In this document: positions 200 to 43,143 of the stretch, piece by piece
Layout of the letters: every line of letters begins with the position of its first letter
Numbering within the stretch: the stretch's first letter is position 1
Origin: Podarcis filfolensis
Lineage: Eukaryota
Reading direction: 5' to 3' (one strand)
DNA: 64,000 nucleotides
NCBI GenBank assembly: GCA_964270895.1
Contig: OZ185440.1
Translations under genes and position numbers: made by a program
The notes under the pieces: model-generated
Seen by the model: only the letters and a program-made list of their open reading frames with translations
What the model was told of the DNA's origin: nothing
Database searches by the model: none

Positions 200-1350
200 A
201 GCCTCACCTGCGACACCGGGCGGAGGGGCGGAGGGCCAGGCGTATTGCCCTATCCGAGCCCCCTCCACCCTCTAACTCTCTGGAATATAAACTCGCCGTC
301 TCCTTGGAAACGCCCCGCCGCGTTCCTCTGAAGCCTCGCCTCTTAAAGGAGCCGTGCCCACGAGGCAGACAGGATGTCGGTCGAGCGTGGAGACGGGGGT
401 CTCGGGGGAAGGAAACGTGTGCGTTGACGCTCTTGGCGCGCCCGCGCTTGCACCCAAGCAATCGGAGGTAAAGAGAAGCCACACGTCGGCCAGTTTTCAT
501 CCGGAAGGGGTCCCACTGGCTTTACGCTTTGGCAACAGTACAGTATTGAGAAACTTCTTTCTTTGCCCATTAATGTTCCCAGGAATAGAGGGGGGGGGGA
601 ATAGAGCTGCGCGTGTTTTGGAGGCCACGGAGACTGGGAACTGGGGAGACGCAGCATTCGCTCCCCGGATGAGTGTTCGAGGGGTTTGGAGAGGGAGCAC
701 AGTGGACTTTTCTTAGCAGGCTTTTCCTGAGGTGCAGATAGGGGGCCAGGTCCCTCCCACCGCCCCGGTCCCGCCCGCTCCGTTGGGGAGGGGGTGCTGT
801 GCCCCTGGGCGGGCTCGGGTTGCAAGAAGGGGCGGGCCGGGCCGGGCGGCGGCTGCACAAAGGCCGAGGCACGCCAGGGCGGTTCTTAGCCGCAGCTTCA
901 GCAGGCAACCTCCCGGCGGGACCCCGCGGGCGGCATTGGAGCGGACTGGATGCCCACTTTCCCCGCCAGCTCTCCTCCGCTTCGCTTCCCTACTGCTGCT
1001 GCTGCTCTGCTCCTCCCTCTCGCCAACTCCCATGCCCGGCATCTGTCCCTCGAGTTCAGCGATGCCCTTTCCCTTGGCACAGCTGAGCTTAGCGCTGCTG
1101 CTGACTCTGGTGCCCATCCCAGGACTGGCAGGGCCAGTGACCACGTGCGATGCCAACGGGAGCCTGTACTACGTTGGGGAGTGGTATTTCCTGGACAGTG
1201 ACCACTGCACCCAGTGCGAGTGCACAGCGGAGGGGCCCGCCTGCGCCCGCACGGACTGCACCGCTCTGCCACCTGCCTGCATTCATGTCAGCCACTACCC
1301 CAGCGACTGCTGCCCACGCTGCGAAAGGGTTGGCTGTGAGCACCGTGGAC
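200..1350. promoter_or_regulatory. CpG island / promoter region of the VWC-domain gene (possibly bidirectional)
   Basis: High GC and CpG density; GC boxes GGGCGG at 218-223 and 226-231; TATAAA at 286-291 on +; candidate + donor GAG|GTAAAG (468) and acceptor ttttcttagcag (719). Confidence 0.7.
208..340 (-). other. Putative first (probably non-coding) exon of a divergently transcribed gene running off the left edge; by recalled human synteny possibly CCDC24
   Basis: Minus-strand consensus donor CAG|GTGAGG (exon ends 208, intron GT 207-206) inside a CpG-rich segment. The 5' boundary (~340) is a guess. Identity rests only on recalled gene order. Confidence 0.35.
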
Positions 1351-4300
1351 AAGTGTATGAGCTGGGGCAGCATTTCCAGGTAAGGCATTCACGGGAGAAT
1401 TAGGCATGGGGGTGGCATGAGAAGGAATCTAGAGCGAGGTGGGCAGGGATGGATATGTGATGGATGGCAAAGTGAGGATATTCAAAAGCAGGAGAAAAGG
1501 CAAATGCTCCTGAAAAAGGCACTGTCTAAGAATTGCAAGCGGTCACTTCTGTTTCTTAAATCTTGTTCTGAAAGGGAGGCCTAGGCAGGAGAGTAAGAGA
1601 CTGGAAGCAGGAATGCTGTGTCTTTATAGTTTGCTGAAGCAAAAGAAAATACAACACAAATACAAACAAAACTAATAAATTGCATTTTTCCAAAGTGGGT
1701 GAGAAGCACCAAATCAAAAGTGAAAACAAAAATTTTTTTTCCAGTAGCACCTTAAAGACCAACTAAGTTAGTTCTTGGTATGAGCTTTCGTGTGCATGCA
1801 CACTTCTTCTATCTGAAGAAGTGTGCATGCACACGAAAGCTCATACCAAGAACTAACTTAGTTGGTCTTTAAGGTGCTACTGGAAGAAAAAAAAATTTTT
1901 TGTTTTGACTATGGCAGACCAACACGGCTACCTATCTGTAACCAAATCAAAAGTGCTTTATGAAGCTGGAGGTGCTCTTAAGATGTTCCCATAAAACCAA
2001 AGCTCTTTAATAATTCAGAAGGCAATTTTATTGGCTGTAGTACCTAGCTGAGCATCCTTTGACTAACTGAATTTCATTTTCATCCATTTCTTAGGCCTGA
2101 CATTGACCTGTTCAGACCTTGCTTCTGGCTATTGTCTGTTGCTGCCAAAAATGTGTGTAGTTTATTTTAGGACTTGAGTCAGACCAAACAATCTCTAGCA
2201 TGGCTGACTTGGACAATTGAGGGTGGGTGGGGAAAGGAGTATTTTTGGCACTAAGCCTGCACTAGCCGAAGGGAGTCAAATTCTGGCCCTGAGGCTGCCC
2301 TCCATTCCTGGGCTCCATGCCTCTTTGGATAGCATGAATTGAGTGTTTGCAAAAAATAAGTGTATTGATGAAGAAAGGACCAGTTGCTACATATAGTCAA
2401 AGAATGGGCAGTGGGGTTCTTCCTAGGTGAATTGTCCGTTAGCTAAACACCAAATTATTGTGTGTCTGTTTGATGACTTATCTCTTGGCCTGTCCCATTT
2501 ACCCAAACACAAAATTCTATTGAAAGGTACACAGAAAGTAAATGCTTTCTGCAAAGCCATATTGAGCCATAATTTCCCCCCAAATAATAACTTTATTATG
2601 GCCAACCAAAATATCATATAATAGCAAGCAAGCTTTTGATTATCCAGAACCATTTAGCTGGGGCCTAACTTGCCCTAAAATACTTTGCTCAGCCAAAGCT
2701 TCTCAGTTCTTTACTAGGGATGGCCATTTTGCTCTAGGTCCAGAACATCTGGGTTGTGGATACAGTAATATAGGGCTGCTTCCCAGCACCTCCTGGAACT
2801 AGGTTATCTTGCATTTGCTTACAAGCAAGACAAGTGCTGTAGATCTAGAGAGAGAAAAGTTCTGTAATTAGGAAGGGTAAACACTTTCCTTTGTACTGTA
2901 GGTTTGTAGTAAGAACAAGATATCAACTTGCCAGTGAAGTTGTGCAATCTCCTTCCCTGGAGTTATAAAGATGATCATGGACAATTACATCATTAAGATA
3001 TGATTTTTGGTGTTAAATGTTGATGTCATCTTCCAGCTTTGTTATTTTAAAGTATTGTGACGAGTGATCTAGAACAAGTGACCAATGTTTTTATTTGCAA
3101 CCACTTGAACTTCAGTGGAGCCCAGTCTTTATCATCACCCACCCTGAAGATGTGAAATCAGACAACCAATCTATTAGTTCAGGAGGGAGGGAATTTGACA
3201 GAAGGTAGAATCTTGGAATTTTCCCCTTAGGGCAGAGAACAAAAGCATGTGGCTTGGCTAGAATTACCTCATGTTTTGCAAGTGAGAAAGTGAATGAGAG
3301 GTGAGGTGCTGAAAATGACTTCAGTATCCTTTGCTGGATATTTTAAGGAGGAGCTTGATTGGTTAATGGGTTCCAAAACACATTCATGGGCCTTTTTAGC
3401 ATATTGGGATCCTTGATGGTTCTGTGCTACTGGGGACAATCTCTCACTCACTCACAGTTTTCTCTAGTCAACATTTTCTTATGACCAGTCAGTTTCCCCA
3501 GTGGCCAGCCGCATGATTATTTGAGAGTAATCTTGAGTTGGCCAGAGCTGACAAGATACACAAAGTCAAGGGAGATTGGGACAGAAGCTTTTCCTCCCTC
3601 ATTATCAATTCTTGGTTGATAGTGCCATCTGATGGTATAATCCCAGTACTGCTATGGCTATGCATTCAGTTTGGAATGCTTCTTCACACATTACAAAAAA
3701 AGGAAGATGATGGGCCTTATATTTCTTTTGTGATCACCCCCTCCCCTGATACTTAAAGCACAGATACAGGTAAGCAAAGATGCAGCCAGGAGCCTAATCC
3801 AATTAAGTATCTGAGGCATGAGTTTCCCACCTGCTTGCATACACACATCTCTTTTTGCAAGTTACAGACAGAAGACATGACTAATTCATTCTGGAACTGC
3901 AAAATCCAGTCAATTCTGCAACCTGGTGGTGGTGGGGGGATGGGTAACCTATTTCTCTCAGCCTAATTTCATTAGGAGGAAAAGGGGGAGGGAAACAGGG
4001 TAGCAGAGGAGGTGCCCTACCCACTTTGACTCTGAACCAGCACACCACTGGCATGCAATTCTGAAGATTCCCAAGGGAATGCAAGTCTCAGAAAAGAATA
4101 AGCTTCTGCACCACTGATGCAAAATAGTTCTGGAGCTGCATCATCATCATAACAACCGTGTGCAGTCCACGTAAAGCTGCCTTGCTCTATTGACCAATAT
4201 TTGTCTCTCACAGCCCTCAGAGTGTGAGCAGTGTACCTGTGACCTAGATGGCATCGCTCGTTGCCTAGTGGCAGACTGTGCCCCTCCGCCCTGTGTCAAT

Positions 4301-5074
4301 CCAGTCTACGAGAAGGGCCACTGCTGCCCCACCTGTGAGGACGGTGAGAAAGACACACCTTCACAGCAAGGGACAAGTGTTCCACTTCAAGCTGTCCAGA
4401 AGGGGGAGAGAACTTTGTCTCCCTCGCTGTTCAGGGCCCCTGTCCTACTGGAGCAGGGAAGCGAGAGGAATTGGGCCAAGCTGACCAGACACAAGGTTGC
4501 TTAACTGAACAGGAAGCCTCCTACTTAGAAAGGATGGCGGGACACCTGGTAGCCCCCACCTCCTCTTGAAGGATTTGGCAGGTGTTTGGCCCTAGGGTTA
4601 GAAGAGGGGCTCCCCCCCAAAATGAAAAATGTCCTCCTGGTACAAAAGCAGCCTGTAGCACAGAACCTGTGGACGAACAGGCACTAGGTGAGCTCCCGGT
4701 AGAGGATAGGGGTGCAAGGCTGGAGTAGTAATAATTTATAATTTTATTATTTATACCCCGCCCATCTGGCTGGGTTGCCCCCACCTACACACGTACTCTT
4801 AAACTGCTTGCCATTTCTGCTTCTAAAAGTCACGATGAGACTTCTGCAAACAATGGCAGACTCTAATACATGGACATGTCTCTCCACAGGGCCCAACTGC
4901 TACGTGGATGGGAGCCAGCGACGCGTAATTCCTGCTGGGGAGAGCATATGGGTGGGGCCCTGCACCCGTTGCCGCTGTCATGATGGCCAGGACGCCGGTT
5001 ACTGGGAAGGAAACCGCTTAGCTAAATGCGAGCGGCTACGGGGATGCCGGGCTACAGGTGCACATCACACCTGA
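1062..5074 (+). CDS. Secreted von Willebrand factor C domain protein, brorin (VWC2/VWC2L) family, 210 aa
   Basis: Exons 1062-1379 (phase 0, CAG|gtaagg), 4214-4343 (cacag|CCC...G|gtgaga, phase 1) and 4890-5074 (cacag|...TGA) total 633 nt. Signal peptide MPFPLAQLSLALLLTLVPIPGLAG, two full VWC repeats (C..G..Y..GE...C..C.C...CC..C) and a third partial Cys repeat. Motifs PSxCExC, CVNPVYE..CCP.C and GPNC...IPAG match VWC2/VWC2L. An in-frame ATG at 1032 has weaker Kozak context. Symbol withheld because orthology is uncertain. Confidence 0.93.
1723..1940 (+). mobile_element. Penelope-like element (PLE) derived insertion with inverted terminal-repeat segment
   Basis: Flanked by a 15-bp direct repeat ACCAAATCAAAAGTG (1708-1722 and 1941-1955). 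Perfect inverted arms at 1739-1809 and 1815-1885 with a 5-nt spacer. Sequence ctgaagaagtgtgcatgcacacgaaagctcatacc...aaggtgctact recognised as a squamate PLE-type repeat (family call from memory). Confidence 0.7.
1810..1846 (+). ncRNA. Minimal type I hammerhead ribozyme motif (PLE type)
   Basis: Stem I 5' UAU (1810-1812), core CUGAAGA (1813-1819), extra A, stem II GUGUG/CACAC with CAUG loop (1821-1834), GAAA (1835-1838), palindromic mini stem III AGCU, cleavage triplet CUC (1840-1842), stem I 3' AUA (1843-1845). Activity not shown. Confidence 0.45.
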
Positions 5075-5313
5075 GCTGCTCCAAACACCAAACAATTCCT
5101 GGGCCAGCCATTCTTCAGCACCTGCAAGGCTTCTGCTTACCCAGACAAGCCCTAGTGTGCCCTTACACCCAGCCCTGGCCCAACTCCTTCAACCATACAC
5201 ATAAGCAATTGCCAGTCGCAGACCCCTTTCCAGATCTACCCCCTTTCCCTTGACGATGTCTAGAGTTATAACACAGGGGAGTAGCTCATATGAGAAAGCC
5301 CGTTTTATTTAGG

Positions 5314-5437
5314 ATGGGTGGGCAACCTGTGGCCATTCAGATATAGTTGGACTCCCAGCTCCCATCAGCTGTAGCCAGCATGGCTAATGGTTAGGAATAA
5401 TTTAGCCACATCTTGAGAGCTAGAGGTTCCCCATATG
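5314..5437. mobile_element. Degenerate hAT MITE in the VWC gene 3' UTR
   Basis: Similar to the 7438/16878/43726 family; ends tgggtgggcaacc ... ggttccccatatg; imperfect TSD atttagga / atttaggg. Confidence 0.5.
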
Positions 5438-5542
5438 ATTTAGGGAATCACCCACCAACCACCACCACATTCCCACTCCAGCTTCAACTAAACATAGCAT
5501 CTTTTGCTACTATTTAACAGTTTTTCTCTGTGTGTGAGCATC

Positions 5543-5548
5543 AATAAA
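5543..5548 (+). terminator. Poly(A) signal, VWC-domain gene
   Basis: AATAAA about 470 nt after the stop codon, with U/GU-rich sequence downstream. Confidence 0.65.
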
Positions 5549-5801
5549 AGAACCTTGTAGAATAGTTCTCTCTTGTCTTCTGGGCTGAGTAACTATGCCC
5601 AGAGTTTCCTGGGCCAGAAAACCCAGTCCCTGGTTTAAACAAACATGTTGGGGAAGCACAATGAGGTGCCATTCATTTGGAAACGAATTTAATTCTTAAT
5701 TTTGTACCTTGCCAAGATAGATTGCATAAACCTGCAGTGTTGCCTCTATCCACAGACCCCACCTGAATCCCATAGGCAAGGAGTCTCCCAAGTTTTGAAA
5801 C

Positions 5802-5807
5802 TTTATT
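5802..5807 (-). terminator. Poly(A) signal, B4GALT2 (3' UTR about 1.4 kb)
   Basis: TTTATT on + = AATAAA on -; convergent with the VWC gene signal about 250 nt away. Confidence 0.6.
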
Positions 5808-7184
5808 GAATACAAAAGTCTGATCGTAGTGACCAGTGCTGCATTCACCATAGGCTTGAAAAGGGATCAAAACATTCAAATGTACAAAAGTCACCAACAC
5901 CTGGGCTGCGCAACACGCTGGTGCCTGGCTTCAAGCCTGGCCCAGCTGCCATCCCAAAGTGGACCAGCGCAGGAGATTCTACCTGCCAGGCACCATAACC
6001 AGAGATGAGGGACACCAGCAGCTTCCTAGCTCCAGGAATTAGGCACACGGCCACCATGTGTCATGAGCAGACGGTCGGACCCAGGGGCCTGGCCTCAGGT
6101 GGTGGCAGATGGCAGCTTGACAAAGAGGGCACGATGAGTGGTCAACGGCAGGTTGCCTGGCAGATGGCGGGAAGGTTGATTGGTGAGTGAGGGTTGGTAT
6201 GGGGTAAGTGGGTTGGAGGTGAGAGGTAGGGGACAGGCAGCAAGAAGCCAACTTCACCTTCCTCTGTTCTGTAGCCATGGCCATAGGCCTATCGGTGCCT
6301 GTAAAAAAGAGAAGCTAGCCCACACCAGAGAGTAGGCAGAACCATGCCATTTTGATTCCACCCTTGCTGAGAAGTGAAGCACACACTGCCCAACCAATAT
6401 TCCCCATTCACAGACAGAAGAGCAAACACTGCTAGGAAGAATGACCTGTTGTCCCTTGACAGACAGGCTACCTGTCACACTAACCCAGGAAGCACTCAAG
6501 TATTCTAATGAGGGTTTTGTATAAAACGCCCCTGTGTTACTGGAGCCAGAAGTGACACCCAGGGCCCAGCAGGGGGACAGCACCAAGCCATGAATGGAGG
6601 TGGGCAGTGGCCAGGCCCATGAGAGCTTCTCCTTTGGAAGAGCTTCTCCTCAGCTGGGCACGAGTGAACCACCTGGACACCTTGCGAGCTGGCATTTGTC
6701 GTAAGGCCAGGCCACCCCCTGGAAGGAAGGCTCAAATGGCACTCTTGCACACTGAGAGGAAAGGAAAACAACTACCTGTACTGTACTTCCGGGATCCTTA
6801 AGGGATGCCGCTCTGTGAAAAGTTCTGGGAGAGGATAGGGAGGTTCAAGAACCTGCACAAGGTTTCTCTGCTCTCAGTGCCTTCCAGCCAGGAGTGGGGC
6901 TTGGCTGTGCCCAGGACCCCTAAGCGCTGCGCCAGGCACCATGACACACTCACACTTCCTCCCCAACCTGTGAAGGGCACTGTGGAGAACTGACTAGTGA
7001 TCAGGAGATGGGCTTCAGCCAAAGGCTGGGGCAAGGCGAAGGTGTAGTCTTGGCCTTTCCCGCATCCCCACAAAGGAGGCAGACAGCTCCTCCAAGCCAG
7101 GACACAGTCCTCTGAACCAGTCAGGGCTGGGATCCGCACAGCTCCTCATGCATGGGGCCATGGGCAGAGCCAGGCAGCAAAGAG

Positions 7185-10100
7185 TCAGCCCCGAGGGGGG
7201 CGTGGTGGTGGGCGGCCAATCTCCACGGTTACATTGGTGTACATGGGACGACGAACCACCTCCACCAGGCGGTACTGAAGCGAGCCAATGCCATCGCGTT
7301 TCATGGTCACCTTGGTATTCTGGATTTTGGTGAACCTGCCAGGAGAACCAGAGAAAAACTCATCTTACACATGAAAGTAGGCAGTTAGGTTAATTCAAGT
7401 TAAACCTACAAGCCATTCCTTGATGAATGGAATAGAGCAGGCTTCCTCAATCTTGGCCCTCCAGATATTTCGAGACTACAATTCCCATCATCCCTGACCA
7501 CTGGTCCTGCTAGCTAGGGATCATGGGAGTTGTAGGCCAAAAACATCTGTAGGACTGAGTTTGAGGAAGCCTGGAATAGAGAGTCTAATGACAGTTCAGG
7601 CCACTTGGAAGGATTTTGGGTAGAGCCTTACGTGACATTATCCACGCACAATAAAGCAATTTCTTATGTCAGATTTCCAGCATACAAAGCACTGTGGGAC
7701 TTCCAAAATGAAATTGTGTCTTCTGAACACATGAACGGACAGTCACCATGCACAGCCCTCCCAGGTTGAAAGTCCCAAGTAACAGAGTGAGCTTCTCCAC
7801 CCAGAGCTCAGCTGTAAAACAACAGTCCCTGTCAAATGATATAGCAAGGTTGCAAAGTGTGATGGCGTCATAGGATCCTGGAGGGCCATGGATGGTGACT
7901 GCATTTAGTTTTCATGATAGGTGATTACTACCACCACACAACCTTCTCAAGTGGAATGTCAGGGTCTCATGAAATAAGGTTTAGTGTATTGCCCTGAAAC
8001 CATGCCAGCTGTGGCTTTTCTCTGGTTCCAGACAATAAATGTTAGGGCACAGGACAGGAGTGCCTTTCTCTTTCCTTGCCTAGAACTAGCAGAACATAGA
8101 TTTAACCAAACACACCTGGTGCATGGTTGGGACTCTGATTCATGTCTGTGTCTCTTAGAAGAGGCAGAGAGCGGAATTAAAACGGGGGGTAGATCAGAAA
8201 GAGAGGAATGCACACGCAGTAATAGAAAACACTCTCTGGGGGAAGGCTAAGGACTTGTAGGCTATCTTGGTTTGTTTCATGGACATTCTACAGGGAGGCA
8301 AACAAATGTGGCCCCTCTCTGCTCATGAGGTGTAGAGTAGTATGCTATAAAAGGGAAGATGTGTCTGGAAGATTATATTCCATTGGAAATCAGGCTTGAA
8401 AGCCATTATGTGCCCAGGGAAATGGTGCAGAAATTTTGTGGGAGCTTTCTATCTCCTTATGTAGCTTGCAATGGACTAGGTAGGGAGCTAGCAAGCACAT
8501 TGTCTCTCTCACCGCTGGGGATTGGGCTCGTTGTGTCGGTCACGCTCGTGCTTGATCATGCGGTAGCGCCCAATGCGGGCATCAGGACGTGACACTTTCA
8601 TGCCATTAAGCGAGATCCTGTGTGAAGAAAAAGTGCAGCTCAAAGACCAGCAGACAGGTTGGGGGCAAACTCTAAATAAAGCTGGAGTTAGTCCTCACCC
8701 TCCAGTCCTCAGCACCCCCAACCCCTTCTGCCTTTCAGAGTATTGGCTCCCCAGGCCCTGCCTGTTATGTGCTGTGGAATACCAACCTGCCTATGTCCTC
8801 CTCTCTCAGATTTGGGAGCATTGTTATAGAAAAGGCAGGTGTTGCATATTACCACCTGCCATTTGCACAGCTACCCCACCCCAGAAGAGAATGCTGTTCC
8901 CTGCCACTCAGCACATTCCCAGGAGACACCACACGGAAAAACAGACTACATGGCTACTACAACCAACTTGCAGAGAACAAGTTCTGGCTAGGCTTGGCCC
9001 AGCCTCTCACGCACCGGTTAAAGATGTCGTCATCTTCCCCACCCCAGCCCCAGTACTCGTTAGGGAAGCCATTGATCTTCAGAAACTGTGTCTTGCTCAG
9101 GCCAGAGACACCTCCGAAGTAGCCAGAGTATGGCAGCCTGCAGAGGACAAGCAGGAGAGATGGGAATCAGTCAAGCCACGAATGGGTTCAGGAGCACAGA
9201 ACCTGGGTGGTCCAAGCTACACCTGACACAGTCTAAATCCCAGTTTCCAAATCAGCCATGTGATGGCAACCCATTGCTCCCACTGCATCAGGTCTCTCCT
9301 AAATCCTTCCCATTTCCCTTCTCCTTAGCTGGAATGCAGGGTTCCATTTTATACACACTGTACCTCCTCCATCTCCTTTTGCCATGTTTGGCAGGTAAGA
9401 ATATAGGCAACACAGAACATTCACATGGGGATCCTGTCTGCTTGTTTACATCACCTTCATATAGGTTTTGCAAGCGCCCATTCCATAATGTAGTATCACA
9501 AGGACTTCCCTGGAGCATTTCATCTAGTCATATAAGAGGCAGCAAAGTTTAAATTAGGGGTATGGACCAAACGGAAGATTCAGTCTGGACCTTGAGTCAG
9601 TACTTCAGAAAACAACATGCCTAAGTCCCAAGTGCTTCTGAGTTGGGGAAAAACAAGATTTCATTTCCCCTCGTTCACTATTGGGTTGTTGTTGTTTTTT
9701 AAGCTATACCTTTCCCCCTTTTTACAGTGGATAAAATTTGCAGGCACATTAGCTGCTCCACAGTGGATTCAGCCAGCCAAATAGTTCCAGGGTGGGGCTT
9801 TTTTCTGTCAGGTACCTTTGAAATTTTATGGTTATTTTTCTAAGGAAACTTTTCCCCCTCCCCCACTATTGGATGAAATTTGCAGGCATCAGAGTCTCCA
9901 AGAAAGATGAATCCTGTCAAATTTCTCAATGATAGCTTCATTGGTTTTCCCACAAGGACAGCCTTCACAGTTTGGGGATGGGTAAAAAGTGTTCACTTAA
10001 ACTTCCCATGTCTTTTGAGGGCAATTATTCGGAAACCAGACATGAAAGAAGTTTCCCTAGGTATGAAACTTGCCAATGGCAGACAAATTGGTTCAATTTT

Positions 10101-13100
10101 TGTGAACTAGGGACTTTTAAAGTTAATCTTGGGAGTCAGGGGACAGAACTAAAAATGATTTCCTTTCCTCCTCACAAAGCACTGGGGTTGAAGACTCCAG
10201 GTGAACTCATTCCCTCTGGTTACAAGCTTGACCTGTCAGTCACAGCAAAATCCCGCCCCCCTTACCCTGGCATTTGTTCTACTTCAGCCATTCCACACCC
10301 CTTGTGTTTTCCTTATACACTAAGGTTAGCTACATTAGTTTTGCTTTCAGCAGGCAATTGTCAGAGTTGTCACGGTGCCATGAGGCACTTTGGTTAATCC
10401 CCACTTTGTCTCTGGATCCCTGAAGAGGTTCCACTTTGTCTCGGACAATCCCAGAATCCCTGCAAAGCACACTGCATTGGCTTGGGATTCATCCAAAGCC
10501 GTTGTATATCTCCACTTTTAAGTACAAAACCCCTGCAAATTATGAAGAAATGTGACATGGTAGTCTTAAGAATGGGGGAGGTTCCTGTACTGTAATCTGG
10601 ATAAGAAACATATTTCACAGCTTGCAGGTCCCCACAAGGTCCAAGCCACACAGAATGAGAGCACACACTGCAGGAGGGATATTTCTCCCCATACGGTCTC
10701 CAACAAGGCAGTCTCAATTATGCTACATTGGCAAGGTAAGTTATGTGTGCAATAAAGTCATATGTTCGTCCTTCCATTTTGCCTCTGACACTCTGAACAA
10801 TTTCAAGGGGCCACTGGCATTTCAAAAAGATCAAAGTGCACAAACTCACCGGAAGCCAAACTTATCCATGGCAACAGCAAAGTGCCGGGGTTGGTCATAA
10901 CAGCGATAGAGATTCCGGTCATCCATGGGCACTAGGTCAACGTCGCTGAAGATGAAGCAGTCATAGCTCTCATCATCTCGAAGGGCTTCTAGGAAGCCCA
11001 CATTCAACAGCTTAGCTCGGTTAAAGGTGTCTTCACCAAACTGTATGGAAAGATAATGAAGGACGGGGTCACATCAACTGCCACGACCCTCTTTCTCTTA
11101 CCTGATGCAGCTGGCTGACCTCTCTCTTGTTACATTTCATTGTGAATAACATTCTATTTTTTTCTAGAACTGTTCTATCTCCCTTTATAGATCTTGCAAA
11201 GTCCCACCAACTGTATTTCAGGTTTATTGTCATGTCAGAGAGCAGGCCTGATTTTTTTAAATGAGAAGCAAGTGAGAAGCATCTACGTCACATTCCACAC
11301 TTACCATAGGTGCAAAGTTCATGGTGCATTGTAAGGCCCACACTCTGCTTCCTCCACAAAGCAGGAAGCCTTTGCTTCCAATCAGAACAGAGATGCATAT
11401 ATTCATGAAAACTAACATACCGCTTTCCCTAATCAGGTTCCTCTCAAGGGAACCAGATGGACCTATGTTCTAAACCCAACCATCTTGCTCTCTTCCGCAT
11501 CTGTGGTGCCATTAGGACAGAACTTTGGGTCAGATATCTAGGCCCTACTCCTTCTGCTTTGGAGCACAGCAGGGCTGGAACACCATATTTTGACGTAATG
11601 CACATTACCATCTGAAGGGGTTGCCCATGAGACCATTCAGTCCAGAATGCTCAGTGACCCAAGTGCACCACTGCCCCCACATTATCATTCTCTACGCACC
11701 TGGTTAATTATATAGATGCCGTAAGACACCTTCTGGCGCCGTAGAATCGGGTGCAGGTAGTGCAGCCAGTACTTGAGGTGGTGCTCCCGGTGCCGGAACG
11801 GAATGAGGATGGCCACCTTCTGGCGAGGCACACAGTCTGGGGGAGAATACTTGCCGCCCTCCCGCACATCTGGGTTTTCCCGTTGCACCCGCTCCATGCT
11901 CATGGGAGTGCTGAACTCGATAAGGAGCCGGCCCACTGCAGGAGAAAGGACTCCATTATCTATGCATCAGCCACAGCCTCTTGACTTACACAAACAGCTC
12001 ATGTCCCTTTCACCAGCCAAGTTGGCAGGGCACTGCCCAGGAAAAAATCAGCAAAGAAACCTAAAAACTGAAACATGTATCAAGCATAGAGACAGCAAAC
12101 AGTCAAAGCAGAGTTAACTCGAATACCCAGCTAAGTGATTCAGAGTTAAGAGGAAAGGTTGTTGCTTGTTGCAGATTGCATTGTTTAATAAAAGTTTTAG
12201 CCCGAGTTTAATATTAATACAGTCATACCTTGGGTTAAAGTAGCTTCGGGATGAGTATTTTCGGGTTGGGCGCTGCGGCGACCTGGAAGTAACGGAGCGC
12301 GTTACTTCCGGGTTTTGCCGCTCGCACATGCGCAGGCGGTCAAAATGACGTCACGCACTTGCGTGGAAGCAGCGAATTGTGACCTGCGCACGCACAGACG
12401 TGGGTTGCATTCACTTCAGGATGCAAACGGGGTTCTGGAACGGATCCTGTTCACATCCAGAGGTACCACTATACCAAAGCTTATGCTTCAACTCTTTATC
12501 CACCTGTCAGGAATAAGGATATTAAGTTCTCTATGCCTTAAATGTTTTGCCCCCTAGGGTGAGGAGATGCTCTATTTTGGTTTTCACCAACCAGGTGCTC
12601 TCCAGATGTTTCTGCGCTACAAGTTTCATCAGCCACAGCCAGTCCAATACATCTGGAGGGCATCAGGTGAGTGAAAGCTGGTCTACTTCGTGCATTCATT
12701 AGAAGAGATCAGCATAAGAAGGAGCTAGCCCTTGTAGCCCCTACTAAGCCATGTCTGTGCAGAAGCTGAGCCCTTTCCCCAATTACTTGTAGCCCACTTG
12801 CAGAAAGGCACCAGCTAGGTACAGTGGGGCTGGGAAAGAGACAAGGAGTTGCCATGGCAAAAAAGGAAATAAAAAGTCTGCTATCTGATCACTGTAAATA
12901 TACTAAGAACACTATTCAGTTTGCCAGCTTTCAACAAATACTGTCTACATATTCCCAACTGTTTTTCCACTGCAGGATTGGCTCCAATGGTAGAGGCTAT
13001 TGGAGCCTATGATTTGCAATACCATGCCTGTTCTGCAGATTCCTAGATCTTCTAGTTCCTATTATCAGGAGCCAAAGCCACTTGACATATTTGCATTGAC

Positions 13101-13544
13101 AGGCAGCAGAGACAGGGAAACAGCAGGTGGCAAGCAGGGCACAAATAAACCCAATAAGTGCAATACAGTTTCCCCACTAAAGGGCCTTCTGTAGGACACG
13201 GCATGAGGCAGACAGAGCTCATCTGTAATCTTACCTAGGCCAGGAGGCATCTCTGGGCAAGGTGGTAAGGGCTTCTCGGTGACAGTGCTGTTCATACTGA
13301 CGGACTTCACACTCGGGGCCAGGAGCTCAGGGCCCAGAGGCCCGGCGGTCCCGTTAGGCCGAGAGACGTTGACGTAGGGCAGAGTGCGGGAGGAGTTGCG
13401 CATATTGAAGCGGCTGAAAAAGTCCAGGCGCTGGGCGTAGACATCAAAGTAGAGGATCATGATGATGAGGAAGTGCAGTAAACATAAGAGCAGCACAGCT
13501 TTGCAGATCCTCTCCAGGGTCACTCCCACCAGCAATCTGCTCAT
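7185..13544 (-). CDS. B4GALT2: Beta-1,4-galactosyltransferase 2, 371 aa
   Basis: Coding exons (-): 13544-13235, 11935-11700, 11040-10850, 9137-9015, 8617-8513, 7335-7185 = 1116 nt, all GT-AG. N-terminus MSRLL..TLERICKAVLLLCLLHF (type II anchor); GT7 motifs FNRAKLLNVG, SDVDL (DxD), WGWGGEDDD, YRMIKH; C-terminus IGRPPPRPPRG. The first coding exon starts at acceptor 13611. Confidence 0.97.
7438..7573. mobile_element. hAT (Buster-type) MITE, 136 bp
   Basis: TIR caggcttcctcaa / ttgaggaagcctg; exact 8-bp TSD GAATAGAG (7430-7437, 7574-7581); fold-back interior. Confidence 0.88.
12220..12471. mobile_element. Tc1/mariner (pogo/Tigger-like) MITE, about 252 bp
   Basis: TA at 12218-12219 and 12472-12473; ends cagtcatacct / gaggtaccacta resemble the cagtggtacctc TIR; internal inverted repeat ggaagtaac..gttacttcc; CpG-rich against AT-rich flanks. 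Confidence 0.7.
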
Positions 13545-14699
13545 CTTCTGGGCACAGGCCAGCCAGCATCAGGGGGGCACAGTGTAGGGGGCTCTGGCCC
13601 AGGCACCAAGCCTGTTTGGGAAAGATGGAGGGGTCAGCAAATACACCTTCCCTACCAGCAGCACCCACCAAACACTCTCATAAGAGCACAGTGTGTTAAA
13701 GGCAAGCAAGTACTACCCCTTCTGTCTTCCCCACAAATTTTGGGCATGTTTCATGGGGAAAGGGTGGCCATCCTATCACTACCATCACCCACAACCTGCA
13801 GAATGACTATGCATGCTTACACTATGGCATTGATTCCAGTCTAAGTAGATGAGCTTTTTCAATCTAATAACTCTCCTGACATTCTATCTCCCCCTATAAA
13901 GAAATGTTGGCAAATGGGCAAGAAGCAGCCCAGCCAAAGAAACAAAAACAAAAGAGATGAAGGGCTGGCACTCAACAAGGGGTTATTAAGAAGGAAGGAG
14001 AGGGCTTCCCACTTGCCAGCACTGATATCCTCCTGCCCTTAACATCAGAAATGAAAGAAGGGCAGGTGTCCCTTGAGCTTTGGGGAGGGCAGACACAGGA
14101 ATCAAGAGGGGAATGATCCAAGTTAGGCAATGCATCCCTTTCCAGGGATCAGGGCCTGTCTTATCTCTCCAACAGCAACTCAGATACCAGCTCTGGAACT
14201 AGACCTTTACCACAACAGACCAGCACCCCTTACGCCCTCTTTTCTGTATTCAATTATCCTTTGCTCCCTCAAAGACCTACATCCTGCACACACAGACATG
14301 ACAGATAACACAGATCAATCACCCATCATCACACCTCTTATCAGAAAAAGGCACCAGTTCCACAGCATTTGGAAGGGAACAATTCTCAACAGGAGCTTTA
14401 TTTAAGAGGGACTGTCCCACTTTCACTTTGAAATCCTGCCATCCCATGCTGGAGTCCCTTTTGTGTGTGTGTGGAGGGGATAAAAAAGGCAAGCTGGATC
14501 TAAGGCACAATTGCACACATGTGGAGAGTATCTGATCTTATCCTTATCAGCAGGATCCCCCCTCATCTATGACAACGAATTTGTAGGATAATAGCAGAAA
14601 GCAGGCAGAAAGAACAGAACGCAGAGCAGGGCTGCACTCCTAGCCCCACTTATCTGGAAGTAAGCCCCACTGTGTTTAATAGGACTTGCTTCTGAATAG

Positions 14700-15062
14700 A
14701 GGGATGCGGGTGGCACTGTGGTCTAAACCACTGAGCCTAGGGCTTGCTGATCGGAAGGTCGGCAGTTCAAATCCCCGCAATGGGGTGAGCTCCCGTTGTT
14801 CGGTCCCAGCTCCTGCCCACCTAGCAGTTCGAAAGCACATCAAAGTGCAAGCAGATAAATAGGTACTGCTCCGACAGGAAGGTAAATGACTTTCCTTACG
14901 CTGCTCTGGTTTTGCCAGAAGTGGCTTAGTCATACTGGCCACATGACCTGGAAGCTGTCTGCAGACAAACGCCGGCTCCCTCGGCCTATAGAGCGAGATG
15001 AGCGCTGCAACCCCAGAGTCATTCGCAACTGGACCTAATGGTCAGGGGTACCTTTACCTTTA
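14700..15062 (+). mobile_element. Sauria SINE, full length
   Basis: tRNA-derived head (gggatgcgggtggcactgtgg; B-box-like ggcagttcaaatccc), tail (ACCTTT)n, 11-bp TSD CTTCTGAATAG (14689-14699, 15063-15073). Confidence 0.88.
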
Positions 15063-15092
15063 CTTCTGAATAGGAATGGTTAGGATGGCACT

Positions 15093-15178
15093 CTTAGGAT
15101 TCCCAAGGAGACTAAAGTCTAACTAGAGAAGTAACCTTAGGATTCCCAAGGAGTCTGAAGTCTAATTAGAGAAGTAAA
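15093..15178. repeat. Diverged tandem duplication, 2 x 43 bp
   Basis: cttaggattcccaaggagactaaagtctaactagagaagtaac followed by cttaggattcccaaggagtctgaagtctaattagagaagtaaa. Confidence 0.85.
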
Positions 15179-16397
15179 TTTTCTGGAAATATTGAAGCCA
15201 TGATTAAAAAACCCAGGGTTTTTTCCACCACTACCTCAAAATAGACATTTCTGGGGACCCTGAAACATTTGCAATACTTTTGAAATGCACTATGCAGATT
15301 GAGGGTGTTAGGGGAGGAGGAGTACCTCTGGCAGCGGACTCGTAATGCTCTTTCTGGGAAAGTTTGTCCGTGTTTGGTTCCCACCCTGCACTCAGCTCTC
15401 ATCTGTGGCTCCTATAGGCTGTCAGAATGTGACAGTGGCACACTCCAGGAAATGGCTTCAACTGGCCAGCTAAACCAGGTAAGGGTGGCCAATGGATCTC
15501 AAATCCTCAGTAAGTTAAAGACTTTCCCTGCATGCAAAGACAGGCTCCAACATGTTCAGCAGAAGAGACCAATAGTGGGCCAAGTGGTCAAGAAGGTTGT
15601 AAGGAACCTAGCATCTCTTTGGTTCTGCCAGTTTATGAGGAGCAGGCAAAGCACTATACAGAGAGAATAAATCATCAACATTATAGCAAGACAAAGAATA
15701 TTATTGTCTCCTCCAGACCTCCAAAGTGTCAAGCAGACATAAAGCACTCAATTCCATAAAAAGAACTGAGAGGGGGAAAGAGGGTGACCAAGACTCAATG
15801 GATACTACATGGAAGTTAATCAGTCTCATTTTCAGAGCTATTGCCATCAGTTTCCGCTTCTTAATATCTGTCATCATATTTATCAGACTTCTAAAACCTC
15901 TACTTTCTCCACTCACACCCACAGTCCTTTGAGGCCCAGGCAAGAGCACAGAAACAAACCCAACAACTGTGCCAACAAGAGGAAGCCCACAAGCAAAGTA
16001 ACTGGATCTTTCTCATGTCAATTGCAGTGCCTCACAGAGGTAGCAATGCAACTTGCTTTTGCATTTGAGAATTGTGCTTTCAGTGTGCAACTCATGACCT
16101 GCTTATTCTAAGTGTACAGGAATAATATTTTAAGGATCTTGTACTATACAAAGTCTTACATAAAAGTATTCCTATTACGTAGTTTTTAGAAATCATTTTG
16201 GGGGGTAAAACTCTATCCACCATTCCAAAAGAAAATGTTTCATAAGTCTATTTTTTCACTTTTAGGGGCAGGGGAAGGCTTTTTGGTGTGGAACTGGGTA
16301 TCCCCCCAAATATTTTTGTTTCCCTGCCCAGACCTTCATAATCCCTGTCAGGGAAAAGTGCAGGGTATAAATATATAATCATCATCATCTCAAGTTA

Positions 16398-16765
16398 AAA
16401 GGTAAAGGTAAAGGTACCCCTGCCCATACGGGCCAGTCTTGACAGACTCTAGGGTTGTGCGCTCATCTCACTCTAGAGGCCGGGAGCCGGCACCGTCCGC
16501 AGACACTTCCGGGTCACGTGGCCAGTGTGACATCGCTGCTCTGGCGAGCCTGCACCAGAGCAGCACACGGAACGCCGTTTACCTTCCCGCTATAAAGCGG
16601 TACCTATTTATCTACTTGCACTTAAGGGTGCTTTCGAACTGCTAGGTGGGCAGGAGCTGGGACCGAAAGACGGGAGCTCACCCCGCCGCAGGGATTCGAA
16701 CCGCCGACCATACGATCGGCAAGTCCTAGGCACTGTGGTTTTACCCACAGCGCCACCCGCGTCCC
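16398..16765 (-). mobile_element. Sauria SINE, full length
   Basis: (AAAGGT)n tail at the left; head gggacgcgggtggcgctgtgg and B box ggttcgaatccc on -; homologous to 14700-15062. Confidence 0.88.
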
Positions 16766-16877
16766 TGAAATATCAGCTTAAAAATAATAATAAACCTGCT
16801 CCTTTAATTCATTCTAGCTGTTTGAAATGTTAGGAAGTACTGAACATGGGACTGTGTGTAAGTAGGTTTTGTTAGAA

Positions 16878-17012
16878 CAGGGGTGGAGAACTTTTGGCCC
16901 TCCTGGCGTTGATGGAATACAACACTCATCATCCCTGTCCACTGTCCATTTCTGCGGTGGGGCTGATGGGTAGTTCAGAAACATCTGAAGGGCCAGGGGT
17001 TCTGCATCCCTG
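16878..17012. mobile_element. hAT MITE, 135 bp
   Basis: Ends caggggtggagaac / gttctgcatccctg; exact TSD TGTTAGAA (16870-16877, 17013-17020). Confidence 0.82.
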
Positions 17013-17430
17013 TGTTAGAAGAAGAATAAAGTCTCTATAACAACAGATTTATTTATTTTGAGTCTTACCTTATGCCAAAGTCAAACATTTCACTGCACAC
17101 ACTGCCACTGATGGAAGGAAATAGGAGTTTTCAAGTAACTACTTCAGGCACCACGACAAAGCATCTGGCTCTCAGCTTAATACAGAGGAAAGTTATAATA
17201 AGCTGTTTCATTCAGGCAAATGCTGGGCTAATCACAAAGCATTTAGCACGTCAGACAGCTGCATATTCAGTACATTCACCCACATACCTTAATCCCATAA
17301 AATCTCTTTCATCCTTTGTGACTGAAACAGCAGACTTTCTGCCTTACTACTGCACTATAGAGTTCTATGACCCTCACAAAAAGGGAAGAAGCCAATAGCT
17401 CTCTCCTTACATGGGGAGGCAGTGAATAAC

Positions 17431-17570
17431 AGAATAATAGAATACAAGGGACCACGAGGATTATCTATTCTAGTCCAACCACCTGCAATGGAATCTTTCA
17501 CCCAACATGGGGCTCAAACCCTTGACCCTGACCCTGAGATTATGAGTCTCATGCTCTTCCAATTGAGCTG
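17431..17570 (-). mobile_element. SINE with tRNA-Lys-like head and CR1-like 3' end
   Basis: The minus strand reads agctcaattggaagagcatgagactcataatctcagggtc...gagccccatgttggg, then ggactaga...cctcgtggtccctt and an attct-type tail. Too degenerate to be a functional tRNA. Confidence 0.6.
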
Positions 17571-18327
17571 TCAGAATAAATTTTGGTTTTGAGTGTGGGA
17601 GTAGTCACTCTTTCCAAAATATGTATGCACAAGAAAACACTCCCGTATTCATTTTACAACAATCAGTTGATCATCACTACTTCCCTTCCGCCTCCAAATT
17701 CACAACGACTGTGGGCAGTGTCCAATGCTCCTGTTCCACTGGTACAAAAGACCTTGCGCTAATGGAATGGAACCTCCTCTCCCATTCAGCTCCACATGCA
17801 CTCTCAAAATCAGCTCTGGAGGATTGGGGAACCCTCTGGAGAAGATTTTGGGGGAACACCAGGGGTAGGAGAAGAAACAGAAGTGCCACTGTGCCAGCAG
17901 GACTCTGTTGATGCTGCTTTGGATGCAACCCTAACGGATAGGAATCTTCACTTCATCCAGGTCTAGATCACACAGCCAACAGATTAAATTGTAACACTCT
18001 TCCTAAAGATCTATCATCTGACCTGAAGGTTTGGAGCGAGGTTGAATGCTTTCCCATGGGGGAAAATGCATGCACAAAGTAATGTAAATGTCAGGGAAAG
18101 CATGGATTTCTCCCAAACATCCACATTTCTATGTGCAGGTAGTTTTTATATCAGCTGTGAGCTAGGGGTTGAAAAGAGTTGAACTAAAATGACAGCATTC
18201 ACCCTGGCACACAAACCACAGCTTTTCACAACTTCTGAAATACATGCTGGGACATTATATGGGGATAGAACAGAAGTCTTGAGTCCTGGATCTTTTGCAC
18301 TAGGTCCTAGATCTCTTGCCCCCCTCC

Positions 18328-18351
18328 TTTTTTTTTTTTTTTTTTTTTTTT
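18328..18351. repeat. Poly(T)24 run
   Basis: 24 consecutive T. Confidence 0.95.
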
Positions 18352-20799
18352 GCAAAACCATTTTGCTTGCAGGCTAGCTTTCCCTTTGAAAGGGAGCCTA
18401 AATTTACACCTACACGTGAACGGAAATTAACATATGCAAATATATATATCATGGGCATGTGCCCTGAGTATTTTAATGCCCCTAGGTATGTTTATTGTGA
18501 ATGCAGCAGAGTGGAAAAAGGATTTATAAGGCACTCTCATTTAATTTTAACCTTGCATGTCCCAATCATCCTACTTACTTGCTCCAGGACACAGTGAAGA
18601 AAGTGCAATGAGAGGAACAATATAAACATCTGAGCTGAAGCAACAATTCCCATTCCAGAGATTCACACATCTCACCTGCCGCTACGGCACACCCAACAAA
18701 GCATACACTAAGGAGAGCTCAAGAGCAGAAGACAACATAGCCAGGGGCATTCTGATGGTCCAGGGAATGAAAGAAGCCCCGTACAAATTTGCAGCTTCCT
18801 TGCCAAACCAACCGACACCAGCACCACTGCTGTATATGGGTCATGCTCCAAGCCAAAGCGGGTTGCAGAGCACATCACACTGGTCTCAGGGCCATGTAGC
18901 TTCCTAACGGTTCGCAATGGGCTGGGTGCACTTGCTCTACTCAACCACATTGCAGAGCTGGAATCTCAAAAGTAGCCATTTCTCAGAACATGTGCCAGGA
19001 CGGCATCCCAGTGCCTTGCTGAGTCTGCTGGAGGAATAACCTCACCAGAGTTTGCTCTATTCGTGGTGAAGATAACAAGGCCTTGCTTAAATGGAAGGGT
19101 GTGGGGAACCTCAGAGGCAGTTTTACGGTAGCGCGACCAGTTTGGCCGCACTAGGCACTGGCACCACTGGGGGCACCACAACAGTGATGTAGAACGGGGC
19201 ACGAGAGGTGGGGGGCACCAAAGTTTAGCATCACACAGGGTGCCACTGAGATTTGGGGATCCAAAGTCTGCCACTGGGAACCTGAAGATTGAGAAAACCA
19301 GTCCAAACACATCTTTGTTCACAATAAGATGGCTCCTCTTAAGGAACAAAATATCTCAAAACAGAATATGTGGATACACATTGGCATCCTAGAAACACCA
19401 CGTTTTACCTGTCAACCAGATGTCTCTTGTCCTAAAGCAGCCCTTGTCAACTTAGCACCCTCCAAAGTTTTGAACTATAACTCCCAAACAGCCCTTAGAT
19501 GGCACATGCTAGCTTTGCCTGGTAGAGGTTGTAGTCCATAATGTAATTCCTTCAAAATTGTGGCTTTCCTGCACTCTGGCTAGTGGAGTGGCTGCCAAAG
19601 GAATATAATTATCTCCTCCCAGGAGCTTTGCTGGTCCCCGAGTTCATCCTCAGATACTTCCTTTGCCAACCTACATCCACTGCATTCAAGAAAACCCTTG
19701 GCCTCCTCTCACACAAGAGGATGAGAAACAGAGGCAGAAGTCAGAAACTGCTTAAGTGGCAACTTTGCCCGTGTGTCAGAGACAGCTCATCTCTGGGGCA
19801 AGAAAGACTATTTGTGAAGCTAGTACACATTGCAGGAGCCCATTAGCCACCATCTTATTCCTAGGATATTATCTACAGCAGCCTCTTAAATGAGATGGCA
19901 TCCCAGGTCTGCCTGTGTTTTCCCTCACAGGAGTCTCTCCATTCCTTTCCCCTCGATTAAGTATGTAGCTGGATATCCCATTGTACAAACAGAGTGCAGG
20001 CAAGCTGTGCAAAATACAAGTTAGCAAAGCTGGAGAGATGGGCTTTTGCAATGTTAACAATCCACTAATGGAGCCAGACTGCAGCTGGGCTGCTCCTTGG
20101 CTGTGAATAATTTATCTGGAAATTCAGTCTTGTCTTCTGCCTGATGATCACCAGAGAGCAGACACCAATGTTTATACAATTTGTGGGCATTAAAAAATAT
20201 CCAGGTTTTAACTGGAGTCAGAAAACATAGCCTCGGGTCAATAATGTTCCTTGCTGACCTGACTTGGCATAAGCATCCCTAACAGTTACCTGTTTTGGAA
20301 AGTTACCTATCTACCTATCTGTGAAAACAGGAAAGTGAAACATTCGTAAATGGTGCCTGCAGGAAGGCACAGGCAGCACAGAGCCCCCTGCTTCCCAGGC
20401 ACACACATTTCTAGGCTATATATAGTGCTAGCCCCTAGTCCCATATGGGCTCCCAAGGGGCAACAAAACCAGTTGGCTGAAGAGAAGCCCATGGGGAAGC
20501 CCTGGGAAAGGTAAGTGGATGCCAGCCAAGGGTTGCTGTTGTGTGTGTGTTTATTCCTCTTTCTTCTTTTTTTGCAAAACTGATCCAAAAGACAGCAACA
20601 AGGCCATTCTGTTCCACACAGAGCACACAGCCTGGTAAACATATACAAGCTCCATTATTTTCCGCCTGGGCTGCCTTGGCTGTGAGGCCCCTCGTTCCTA
20701 AAAGCAGCTGCCCCTTCCCTTTTCCTAAGAGAAAGGCTACATTGTTTCTCCACGGATCCCCCTGCCTGGAACAGGAAATCCCCCGTCTTGTCAGGAACC

Positions 20800-28759: not shown

Positions 28760-43143
<14,384 letters not shown>

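What the first reader, a model, noticed from the sequence alone, without database searches (positions are those of the whole stretch)
1062..5074. Probable third brorin (VWC2/VWC2L) paralogue at a site where mammals appear to have no such gene
Seen: an intact 210-aa secreted protein with two VWC repeats plus a partial third, clean splice sites and a poly(A) signal. Knowledge: VWC2 (brorin) and VWC2L are neural BMP antagonists, brorin is an AMPA-receptor complex component, and as I recall both map to other human chromosomes while human B4GALT2 directly abuts CCDC24. This protein lacks the N-terminal acidic segment preceding the first VWC repeat in VWC2L, has a divergent first repeat (YYVGEWYFLDSDHC) and has an insertion in the last repeat (GQDAGYWEGNRL). 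Inference: an ancient paralogue retained in reptiles (perhaps fish and birds) and lost in mammals, i.e. an uncharacterised BMP or glutamate-receptor modulator.
Basis: partly seen in the sequence, partly recalled or inferred. Interest (0 to 1): 0.78.

Follow-up and report, generated by a model that had tools for sequence, protein, structure and literature searches.

The report
Ancient brorin-family gene missing from mammals
This lizard-type genome carries a real, spliced and strongly conserved gene for a small secreted brorin-like (VWC2-family) protein, the counterpart of the unstudied zebrafish gene zgc:113531; it has sat beside B4GALT2 since lampreys and was not found in any mammal or bird protein set.

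Summary
Exons 1062-1379, 4214-4343 and 4890-5074 (+) have GT-AG introns and encode a 210-aa, 26-Cys protein. Each exon matches one Pfam VWC2L domain (1st, 2nd, C). Public run contigs carry both predicted splice joints and end about 20 nt after the AATAAA at 5543.

- **Not a VWC2 or VWC2L orthologue.** It belongs to a separate clade (zebrafish zgc:113531) found in lamprey (exon 3 only), chimaera, sharks, ray-finned fishes, lungfish, amphibians, turtles and squamates.
- **Phylogeny.** The clade has 97/94 support. All VWC2, VWC2L, a fourth fish/coelacanth/lungfish clade and the other cyclostome paralogues lie across a 100/99 branch. AU tests reject the alternative groupings (p<0.001). Shared indels agree with the tree.
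- **Synteny.** CCDC24(-) – gene(+) – B4GALT(-) is conserved in pike and an agamid lizard. The B4GALT link also holds in turtle and lamprey.
- **Constraint.** dN/dS is 0.04 against another lizard.
- **Distribution.** No mammal, bird or crocodilian member appeared, but genomes could not be searched.

So it is one of four gnathostome paralogues, not a third, and the earliest-diverging. The gene is already annotated ("VWC2-like") but I found no study of it. BMP antagonism is inferred only. The scan had not noted this gene on other DNA.

The parts
790..1061 (+). G+C-rich promoter and 5' UTR region. It holds an out-of-frame upstream ATG at 950 and an in-frame ATG at 1032.
   Evidence: Conserved with the agamid locus L004 (window 790-1387, 75% identity). 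Run contigs cover 900-1379 continuously. ORF list.
1062..1379 (+). Coding exon 1 (106 codons, phase 0): signal peptide, first VWC repeat and the start of the second.
   Evidence: Pfam VWC2L_1st 1.5e-14. The start ATG aligns with Candoia, Thamnophis and Gekko. Conserved at DNA level with lizard, turtle, pike and shark.
1380..4213 (+). Intron 1 (GT..AG). It contains a repeat/hairpin insertion at about 1708-1940.
   Evidence: Joint 1379|4214 in contigs of 4 runs. The insertion is absent from contigs of X1, X9 and X13 (joints 1707>1941 and 1715>1951).
4214..4343 (+). Coding exon 2 (130 nt): the rest of the second VWC repeat.
   Evidence: Pfam VWC2L_2nd 4.7e-10. It is the most conserved exon, 78-86% DNA identity to turtle, lizard, pike and shark.
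4344..4889 (+). Intron 2 (GT..AG, phase 1). It holds a high-copy repeat around 4603-4924.
   Evidence: Joint 4343|4890 in 4 runs. Very high summed depth over 4603-4924.
4890..5074 (+). Coding exon 3 with the TGA stop: the C-terminal partial VWC domain with the clade motif GYWEGNR.
   Evidence: Pfam VWC2L_C 2.1e-17. The motif is conserved from lamprey to lizard.
5075..5564 (+). 3' UTR, with AATAAA at 5543-5548 and the transcript end near 5562-5564.
   Evidence: for the signal. Contigs of X1, X2 and X13 end at 5562-5564.
5731..13559 (-). Neighbouring B4GALT2 gene, convergent with the VWC gene (context, not part of the gene).
   Evidence: Colinear blastn blocks match the Glyco_transf_7N/7C genes of L004 and L002. 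The exon-1 ORF is at 13065-13544.

Best explanation
A functional, transcribed three-exon gene encodes a 210-aa secreted cysteine-rich protein with two VWC repeats and a C-terminal partial VWC. It is the squamate orthologue of zebrafish zgc:113531. This is a separate and very old branch of the brorin (VWC2) family. It split from the lineage leading to VWC2, VWC2L and a fourth fish-type paralogue before lampreys and jawed vertebrates diverged. It has stayed next to a B4GALT gene ever since, and it has apparently been lost in mammals and possibly in archosaurs.

Shown here: the gene structure, its splicing, its conservation, its phylogenetic position and its synteny.

Inferred, by homology at 38-43% identity with the VWC fold: after signal-peptide cleavage near residue 23-24 the protein is secreted and binds BMP/TGF-beta-family ligands through its VWC repeats, acting as an extracellular antagonist or modulator like brorin and brorin-like. 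I put about 0.9 on the identity and evolutionary position and about 0.5 on the BMP-binding mechanism.
For: - **Gene model and domains:**
- **Splicing:** spliced contigs in 4 runs from 4 studies, with exon depth well above intron depth.
- **Orthologues:** 59-92% identical from shark to lizard, against 38-43% to VWC2 and VWC2L.
- **Constraint:** dN/dS is 0.04 against Phrynocephalus at dS 0.78, 0.125 against Emys and 0.07 against Esox.
- **Tree:** the clade has 97/94 support, and the opposite clade holding all other vertebrate members has 100/99. The lamprey exon-3 fragment falls inside the clade at 100/99.
- **AU tests:** 'all gnathostome members form one clade' is rejected (p 0.0007), and 'this clade plus VWC2L' is rejected (p 0.0009).
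- **Shared indels:** this clade keeps the CxxCxC spacing and the longer 'HYPxxCC' loop seen in Ciona, a mollusc and P0092. All the other vertebrate members share a 1-aa deletion, a 2-aa deletion and the DYRGKGC motif.
- **Intron positions:** the same as in Esox brorin, matching the two-intron structure reported for brorin (PMC5407822).
- **Synteny:** CCDC24(-)/gene(+)/B4GALT(-) in Esox and Phrynocephalus. B4GALT lies downstream in Emys and Lampetra.
- **Fold:** AF2 model with pLDDT 84.7. It matches tandem VWC domains of NELL, the collagen IIA VWC (5nir, TMt 0.65) and CV2 VWC1 bound to BMP-2 (3bk3_C, TMt 0.67).
- **Family function:** brorin and brorin-like are secreted BMP antagonists (PMC5407822, PMC6502786).
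Against: - No functional data exist for any member of this clade.
- The N-terminal DYRGKGC segment shared by VWC2 and VWC2L is missing and repeat 1 is divergent, so ligand specificity may differ.
- The tissue of expression is unknown because run identities were coded and are only guessed to be RNA.
- Absence from mammals, birds and crocodilians rests on protein databases. One search drew its search words from exon 1 only and was limited to proteins of 118-376 aa. No genome search was possible.
- Only exon 3 of the lamprey gene was found within 16 kb.
- The outgroup branches are long, so the root is less secure than the unrooted split. The AU groups were named after the tree had been seen.
Confidence: 0.8

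Rival explanations
1. The protein is secreted, but its main role is not BMP antagonism. It could be a ligand for another receptor, a matrix component or a synaptic complex component. VWC2L binds CD36 in a screen, and brorin and brorin-like co-purify with AMPA receptors.
For: - Only 38-43% identity to VWC2 and VWC2L, a divergent first repeat and no DYRGKGC segment.
- VWC2L-CD36 binding was reported in PMC9578707.
- AMPA-receptor association of brorin and brorin-like, with unknown role, is reviewed in PMC6502786.
Against: - The VWC fold and all cysteines are conserved.
- The nearest characterised relatives are BMP antagonists.
- Nothing specific links this clade to other partners.
Confidence: 0.3
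2. The gene is not truly lost in mammals. An orthologue exists but is unannotated, highly divergent or sited elsewhere.
For: - Only protein databases could be searched.
- The turtle copy already has a strongly divergent, G+C-biased first repeat, which shows that amniote copies can drift.
Against: - No mammalian protein was among the 68 hits found with words from the highly conserved exon 1.
- None was among the named clusters checked from the exhaustive search.
- Mammals do appear readily for VWC2 and VWC2L.
- From general knowledge, human B4GALT2 and CCDC24 are immediate neighbours.
Confidence: 0.07
3. It is simply the species' VWC2L or VWC2 gene, relocated, as the NCBI name 'VWC2-like' suggests.
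For: Database names and the shared Pfam architecture.
Against: - Trees and AU tests.
- Indel characters.
- Canonical brorin occurs alongside this gene in Candoia and Esox, and squamates also carry canonical VWC2L (Anolis).
- The genomic neighbourhood is different.
Confidence: 0.02
4. It is a pseudogene or a chance ORF assembly.
For: None found.
Against: - Intact frame and canonical splice sites.
- Spliced transcripts.
- dN/dS of 0.04.
- All 26 Cys are kept in squamate orthologues.
Confidence: 0.01

Closest known systems
zebrafish zgc:113531 and its NCBI/UniProt-annotated orthologues ('von Willebrand factor C domain-containing protein 2-like', e.g. Candoia aspera P0006, Gekko japonicus P0003, Esox lucius P0019)
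   Same: Same orthology group: 59-92% identity, the same three exons, the same CCDC24/B4GALT2 neighbourhood and the same GYWEGNR motif.
   Different: Nothing essential differs. Only signal-peptide details vary. No member has been characterised in the papers searched.
VWC2L (brorin-like)
   Same: Similar size, signal peptide, Pfam architecture VWC2L_1st + VWC2L_2nd + VWC2L_C, and two introns at homologous positions.
   Different: - About 38-40% identity.
- VWC2L has the DYRGKGC N-terminal segment, a 1-aa shorter CxCxC motif, a 2-aa shorter loop before the CC pair and a shorter C-terminal domain.
- It lies at a different locus and in a separate clade.
VWC2 (brorin)
   Same: Same core domain architecture, exon structure and VWC fold.
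   Different: Brorin has a roughly 150-aa N-terminal extension and shares the derived indels with VWC2L. Identity is about 40%. It lies at a different locus and is present in mammals and birds.
Ciona intestinalis 'VWC2-like' (P0088) and other invertebrate brorin-like proteins
   Same: They share the longer CxxCxC and 'HxxxxCC' spacing and a W-x-G-N/S motif in the C-terminal domain. Ciona was the best non-clade BLAST hit.
   Different: About 37-38% identity, with long N-terminal extensions. They served as outgroups, and orthology to this clade specifically is not shown.

Membership tests
VWC2/brorin family (Pfam VWC2L_1st + VWC2L_2nd + VWC2L_C) | All three family-specific domains are present in order and score above the curated cut-offs. 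| tested here: met
   54.1, 40.0 and 63.2 bits against a cut-off of 27. The orthologue P0006 gives the same result.
VWC2/brorin family (Pfam VWC2L_1st + VWC2L_2nd + VWC2L_C) | Coding region split by two introns at homologous positions. | tested here: met
   Window exons. Esox brorin exon ends fall at ..EFK|VS.C and ..CK.G|PNC. The two-intron structure is stated in PMC5407822.
VWC2/brorin family (Pfam VWC2L_1st + VWC2L_2nd + VWC2L_C) | N-terminal signal peptide (secreted protein). | tested here: inconclusive
   The N-terminus is hydrophobic (LSLALLLTLVPIPGLAG) and the AF2 model of the orthologue has a helix at 6-15. No dedicated signal-peptide predictor was available.
VWC2/brorin family (Pfam VWC2L_1st + VWC2L_2nd + VWC2L_C) | VWC fold. 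| tested here: met
   AF2 pLDDT 84.7. Foldseek matches NELL VWCs, collagen IIA VWC 5nir (rmsd 2.3) and CV2 VWC1 3bk3_C.
VWC2/brorin family (Pfam VWC2L_1st + VWC2L_2nd + VWC2L_C) | BMP binding and antagonism. | not testable with these tools
   Known for brorin and brorin-like only (PMC5407822, PMC6502786).
VWC2L orthology group | Groups with VWC2L in a phylogeny and carries the DYRGKGC segment and the derived indels. | tested here: not met
   AU p 0.0009. Alignment.
VWC2 (brorin) orthology group | Groups with brorin, and is the species' only copy of that type. | tested here: not met
   Candoia and Esox have a separate brorin.
zgc:113531 orthology group | Monophyly with fish, amphibian and turtle members, plus conserved CCDC24/B4GALT2 synteny. 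| tested here: met
   Clade support 97/94 and 100/99. Synteny.

The most novel reading that the evidence does not exclude
This clade is the ancestral-type brorin gene. It keeps the tunicate and invertebrate domain spacing and an ancient linkage to a B4GALT gene, and it arose before or at the first vertebrate genome duplication. VWC2, VWC2L and the fish-only fourth paralogue would then be a derived trio on the Hox-linked paralogon. On this reading the gene has a ligand specificity or role of its own that non-mammalian vertebrates still use, and that mammals (and perhaps archosaurs) dispensed with independently.
Probability: 0.3. Interest if true: 0.6.

Novelty: new member of a known kind. Interest (0 to 1): 0.45.

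Why it matters
Brorin and brorin-like are treated in the literature as a two-member family of neural BMP antagonists and AMPA-receptor-associated proteins. This work indicates four gnathostome members. The oldest is under strong purifying selection from shark to lizard (with an exon-3 copy in lamprey), is absent from the mammalian models and has not been studied. For zebrafish, Xenopus and reptile work this matters in two ways. First, redundancy with this gene could mask brorin or brorin-like phenotypes. Second, an extracellular BMP-pathway modulator exists that mouse genetics cannot reveal. It also gives a clean case of deep synteny with B4GALT2 and of lineage-specific loss.

Tried and rejected
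- **Papers.** Searches for zgc:113531 in three spellings found no relevant paper. Supplements are not indexed.
- **Solved structures.** A sequence search of PDB with the orthologue gave nothing at E<=0.01.
- **Lamprey gene.** Exons 1-2 were not found within 16 kb upstream of exon 3 in L006. The introns may be longer, as in shark where intron 1 is 13.6 kb, so the full gene is unconfirmed.
- **Mammalian, bird and crocodilian loci.** These could not be fetched.
- **Exhaustive representative search.** It clusters at 50% identity, so it cannot by itself show absence in a taxon. I therefore named 30 clusters. All named close relatives were fish, turtle, chimaera or lamprey.
- **Earlier scan notes.** They held nothing on VWC2 or VWC2L loci of this genome.
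- **Spliced window protein.** It has no reference, so the orthologues P0005 and P0006 (84-92% identical to it) stood in for the big search and for folding.
- **Expression.** Tissue could not be read because run and organism names are coded.
Full report

Yes. Reading the window and splicing 1062-1379, 4214-4343 and 4890-5074 gives a 633-nt open frame. The introns are GT..AG in phases 0 and 1. The protein is 210 aa with 26 cysteines, and AATAAA lies at 5543.

Each exon on its own matches one family-specific Pfam model above the curated cut-off:
- exon 1: VWC2L_1st, 1.5e-14
- exon 2: VWC2L_2nd, 4.7e-10
- exon 3: VWC2L_C, 2.1e-17

One run search found 12 runs of a closely related organism holding about 30% of the sampled words, which is the exonic share. 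I laid four runs from four studies on the stretch. All four carry contigs joined exactly at both predicted introns. The joint reported as 1376>4211 '(cut +3) GT..AG' is 1379|4214. The joint 4341>4889 with a 'T' between is 4343|4890 plus a synonymous C>T at 4342. Depth over exons is 10-60 times the depth over introns in X1, and contigs end at 5562-5564, about 20 nt after the poly(A) signal. The runs are only guessed to be RNA, and their identities are coded, so tissue is unknown.

**2. What is it?**

A word-index search with exon 1 returned 68 relatives. I used an in-frame upstream extension as length padding. The hits came from squamates, turtles, frogs, caecilians, lungfish, gar, teleosts and sharks. 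Most are named 'VWC2-like' by NCBI, and some are named zgc:113531 in UniProt.
- Squamates: Gekko 88%, Phrynocephalus 92%, Candoia 84% and Thamnophis 80% identity over the whole protein.
- No mammal or bird was among them.

Identity within this group is 59-92%. To VWC2, VWC2L and every other relative it drops to 43% or less.

The exhaustive representative search plus cluster look-ups added several more turtles, the chimaera Callorhinchus and an 89-aa Lampetra fluviatilis product. The lamprey product is the clade-type exon 3 (…CHDGLETGYWEGNRVARCERL).

**3. Phylogeny**

I collected named VWC2 and VWC2L proteins from mammals, birds, turtles, squamates, amphibians and fishes. I also took in lamprey and hagfish paralogues, a Ciona protein, a mollusc protein and one unnamed invertebrate-like protein.

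The IQ-TREE analysis (LG+C20 PMSF, 60 rows) gave these results:
- The candidate clade is monophyletic (97/94).
- Every other vertebrate member lies on the other side of a long branch (100/99, length 2.04).
- On that side sit VWC2L, VWC2, a fourth clade (si:dkey-283b1.7 type) from teleosts, coelacanth and lungfish that is sister to VWC2, and three cyclostome groups.

Adding the lamprey exon-3 fragment, Callorhinchus and Chrysemys placed all three inside the candidate clade (100/99).

AU tests reject two alternatives: 'all gnathostome members form one clade' (p 0.0007) and 'candidate clade plus VWC2L' (p 0.0009). The groups were named after the tree was seen, and the outgroup branches are long.

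Independent indel characters agree with the tree:
- The candidate clade shares with Ciona, the mollusc and P0092 the CxxCxC spacing and the longer loop before the CC pair in repeat 1.
- All other vertebrate members share a 1-residue deletion, a 2-residue deletion and the N-terminal DYRGKGC segment.

The same species carry the canonical genes too: Candoia has brorin P0251 and Esox has brorin P0306, alongside their copies of this gene. Anolis, another squamate, has VWC2L P0370. The intron positions are the same as in Esox brorin, as reported for brorin in PMC5407822. The gene is therefore not a retrocopy.

**4. Synteny**

- The orthologue lies between CCDC24 (-) and a Glyco_transf_7N/7C gene (-) in Esox lucius and in Phrynocephalus.
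- The B4GALT gene follows it in Emys.
- In Lampetra a B4GALT gene lies 8 kb downstream on the opposite strand.
- The window is colinear with the lizard and turtle loci, with B4GALT2 exons on the minus strand from 7187 to 13559 and a conserved 3' UTR from 5731. The two genes are convergent, with under 200 bp between their ends.
- CCDC24 lies just outside the window, as inferred from L004.
- Further along the window are diphthamide-synthesis (DPH2-type) exons at 46-48 kb, as expected for this chromosomal neighbourhood.

**5. Constraint and structure**

dN/dS over the mature protein is 0.04 against Phrynocephalus (dS 0.78), 0.125 against Emys and 0.07 against Esox.

An AlphaFold2 model of the Candoia orthologue, built with alignment A1, has mean pLDDT 84.7. 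Foldseek matches it to the tandem VWC domains of NELL, to the collagen IIA VWC (5nir, rmsd 2.3 Å), to the CCN3 VWC and to Crossveinless-2 VWC1 in complex with BMP-2 (3bk3_C). No solved structure is detectable by sequence.

**6. How it probably works**

Shown: a conserved, spliced gene for a cysteine-rich protein with a hydrophobic N-terminus and VWC folds.

Inferred: the signal peptide is cleaved near residue 23-24, the protein is secreted, and its VWC repeats bind BMP-family ligands. That would make it an extracellular antagonist or modulator like brorin and brorin-like (PMC5407822, PMC6502786).

The missing DYRGKGC segment and the divergent first repeat leave room for a different specificity or partner. 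VWC2L also binds CD36 in a screen (PMC9578707). The role of brorins in AMPA-receptor complexes is unknown.

**7. Comparison and novelty**

The gene is the squamate member of the zgc:113531 group. Its existence is already recorded in public annotation, under a name that hides its distinctness. I found no paper that mentions it.

What this analysis adds:
- It is not VWC2L.
- It is the earliest-diverging of four gnathostome paralogues.
- It predates the lamprey split, with conserved B4GALT linkage.
- It was not seen in mammals, birds or crocodilians.

From general knowledge of human map positions (not tested here), VWC2 (7p12) and VWC2L (2q34) lie on the Hox-linked paralogon. The fourth clade sits next to an RPL23-type gene in Girardinichthys, and RPL23 is at 17q12 in human, which is on the same paralogon. 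B4GALT2 (1p34) is on a different paralogon. That fits a split of this clade before, or apart from, the duplications that produced the other three.

**8. Verdict**

This is a new (uncharacterised) member of a known kind and is of moderate interest. The main open points are the loss claim, which needs genome searches, and the function, which needs experiments. The scan had not noted this gene on other DNA.

Noticed in passing
L007 (Girardinichthys) 10001-29318; proteins P0397, P0403, P0398-P0410, P0424: There is a fourth VWC2-family clade (si:dkey-283b1.7 type) in teleosts, coelacanth and lungfish. It is sister to VWC2 (100/98) and no tetrapod member was seen. In Girardinichthys it lies next to a 140-aa Ribosomal_L14 (RPL23-type) gene.
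   Followed up: partly
window 1708-1940: The hairpin element in intron 1, noted earlier in the scan as s1-312117, is an insertion that is absent from contigs of runs X1, X9 and X13. The joints are 1707>1941 (with 15 shared letters) and 1715>1951. The element belongs to a very high-copy family, with summed depth in the thousands to 100,000.
   Followed up: partly
window 4603-4924: A second high-copy repeat lies in intron 2. It has a TAA-rich edge near 4736-4743 and many contigs break at 4738-4785, so it is probably a SINE-like element.
   Followed up: no
window 950-1201 and 1032: An out-of-frame upstream ATG at 950 opens an 83-codon ORF that overlaps the start codon. An in-frame ATG at 1032 would add 10 residues. 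Run contigs cover this region, so translation may depend on leaky scanning.
   Followed up: no
window 1093: The Leu-rich signal-peptide core varies in length. GCTGCT or GTT is inserted after 1093 in contigs of the related runs.
   Followed up: no
L002 (Emys) 10001-10315; P0067, P0077, P0078: Turtle copies have a strongly divergent, Ala/Arg/Gly/Pro-rich first VWC repeat and an odd overall composition, while exons 2 and 3 stay conserved. This may reflect G+C-biased drift in amniotes and bears on the apparent absence in archosaurs.
   Followed up: no
L006 (Lampetra fluviatilis) 16238-16390 and 24286-26474: The lamprey has a clade-type exon 3 annotated as an 89-aa product, with a B4GALT gene 8 kb downstream. 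Exons 1-2 were not found in the 16 kb upstream.
   Followed up: partly
window 5564-5731: The 3' ends of the VWC gene and B4GALT2 converge with under 200 bp between them.
   Followed up: no
window 46073-47823 (+): Two large exon ORFs match Pfam Diphthamide_syn (DPH2-type), at 2.3e-21 and 5.6e-56.
   Followed up: partly
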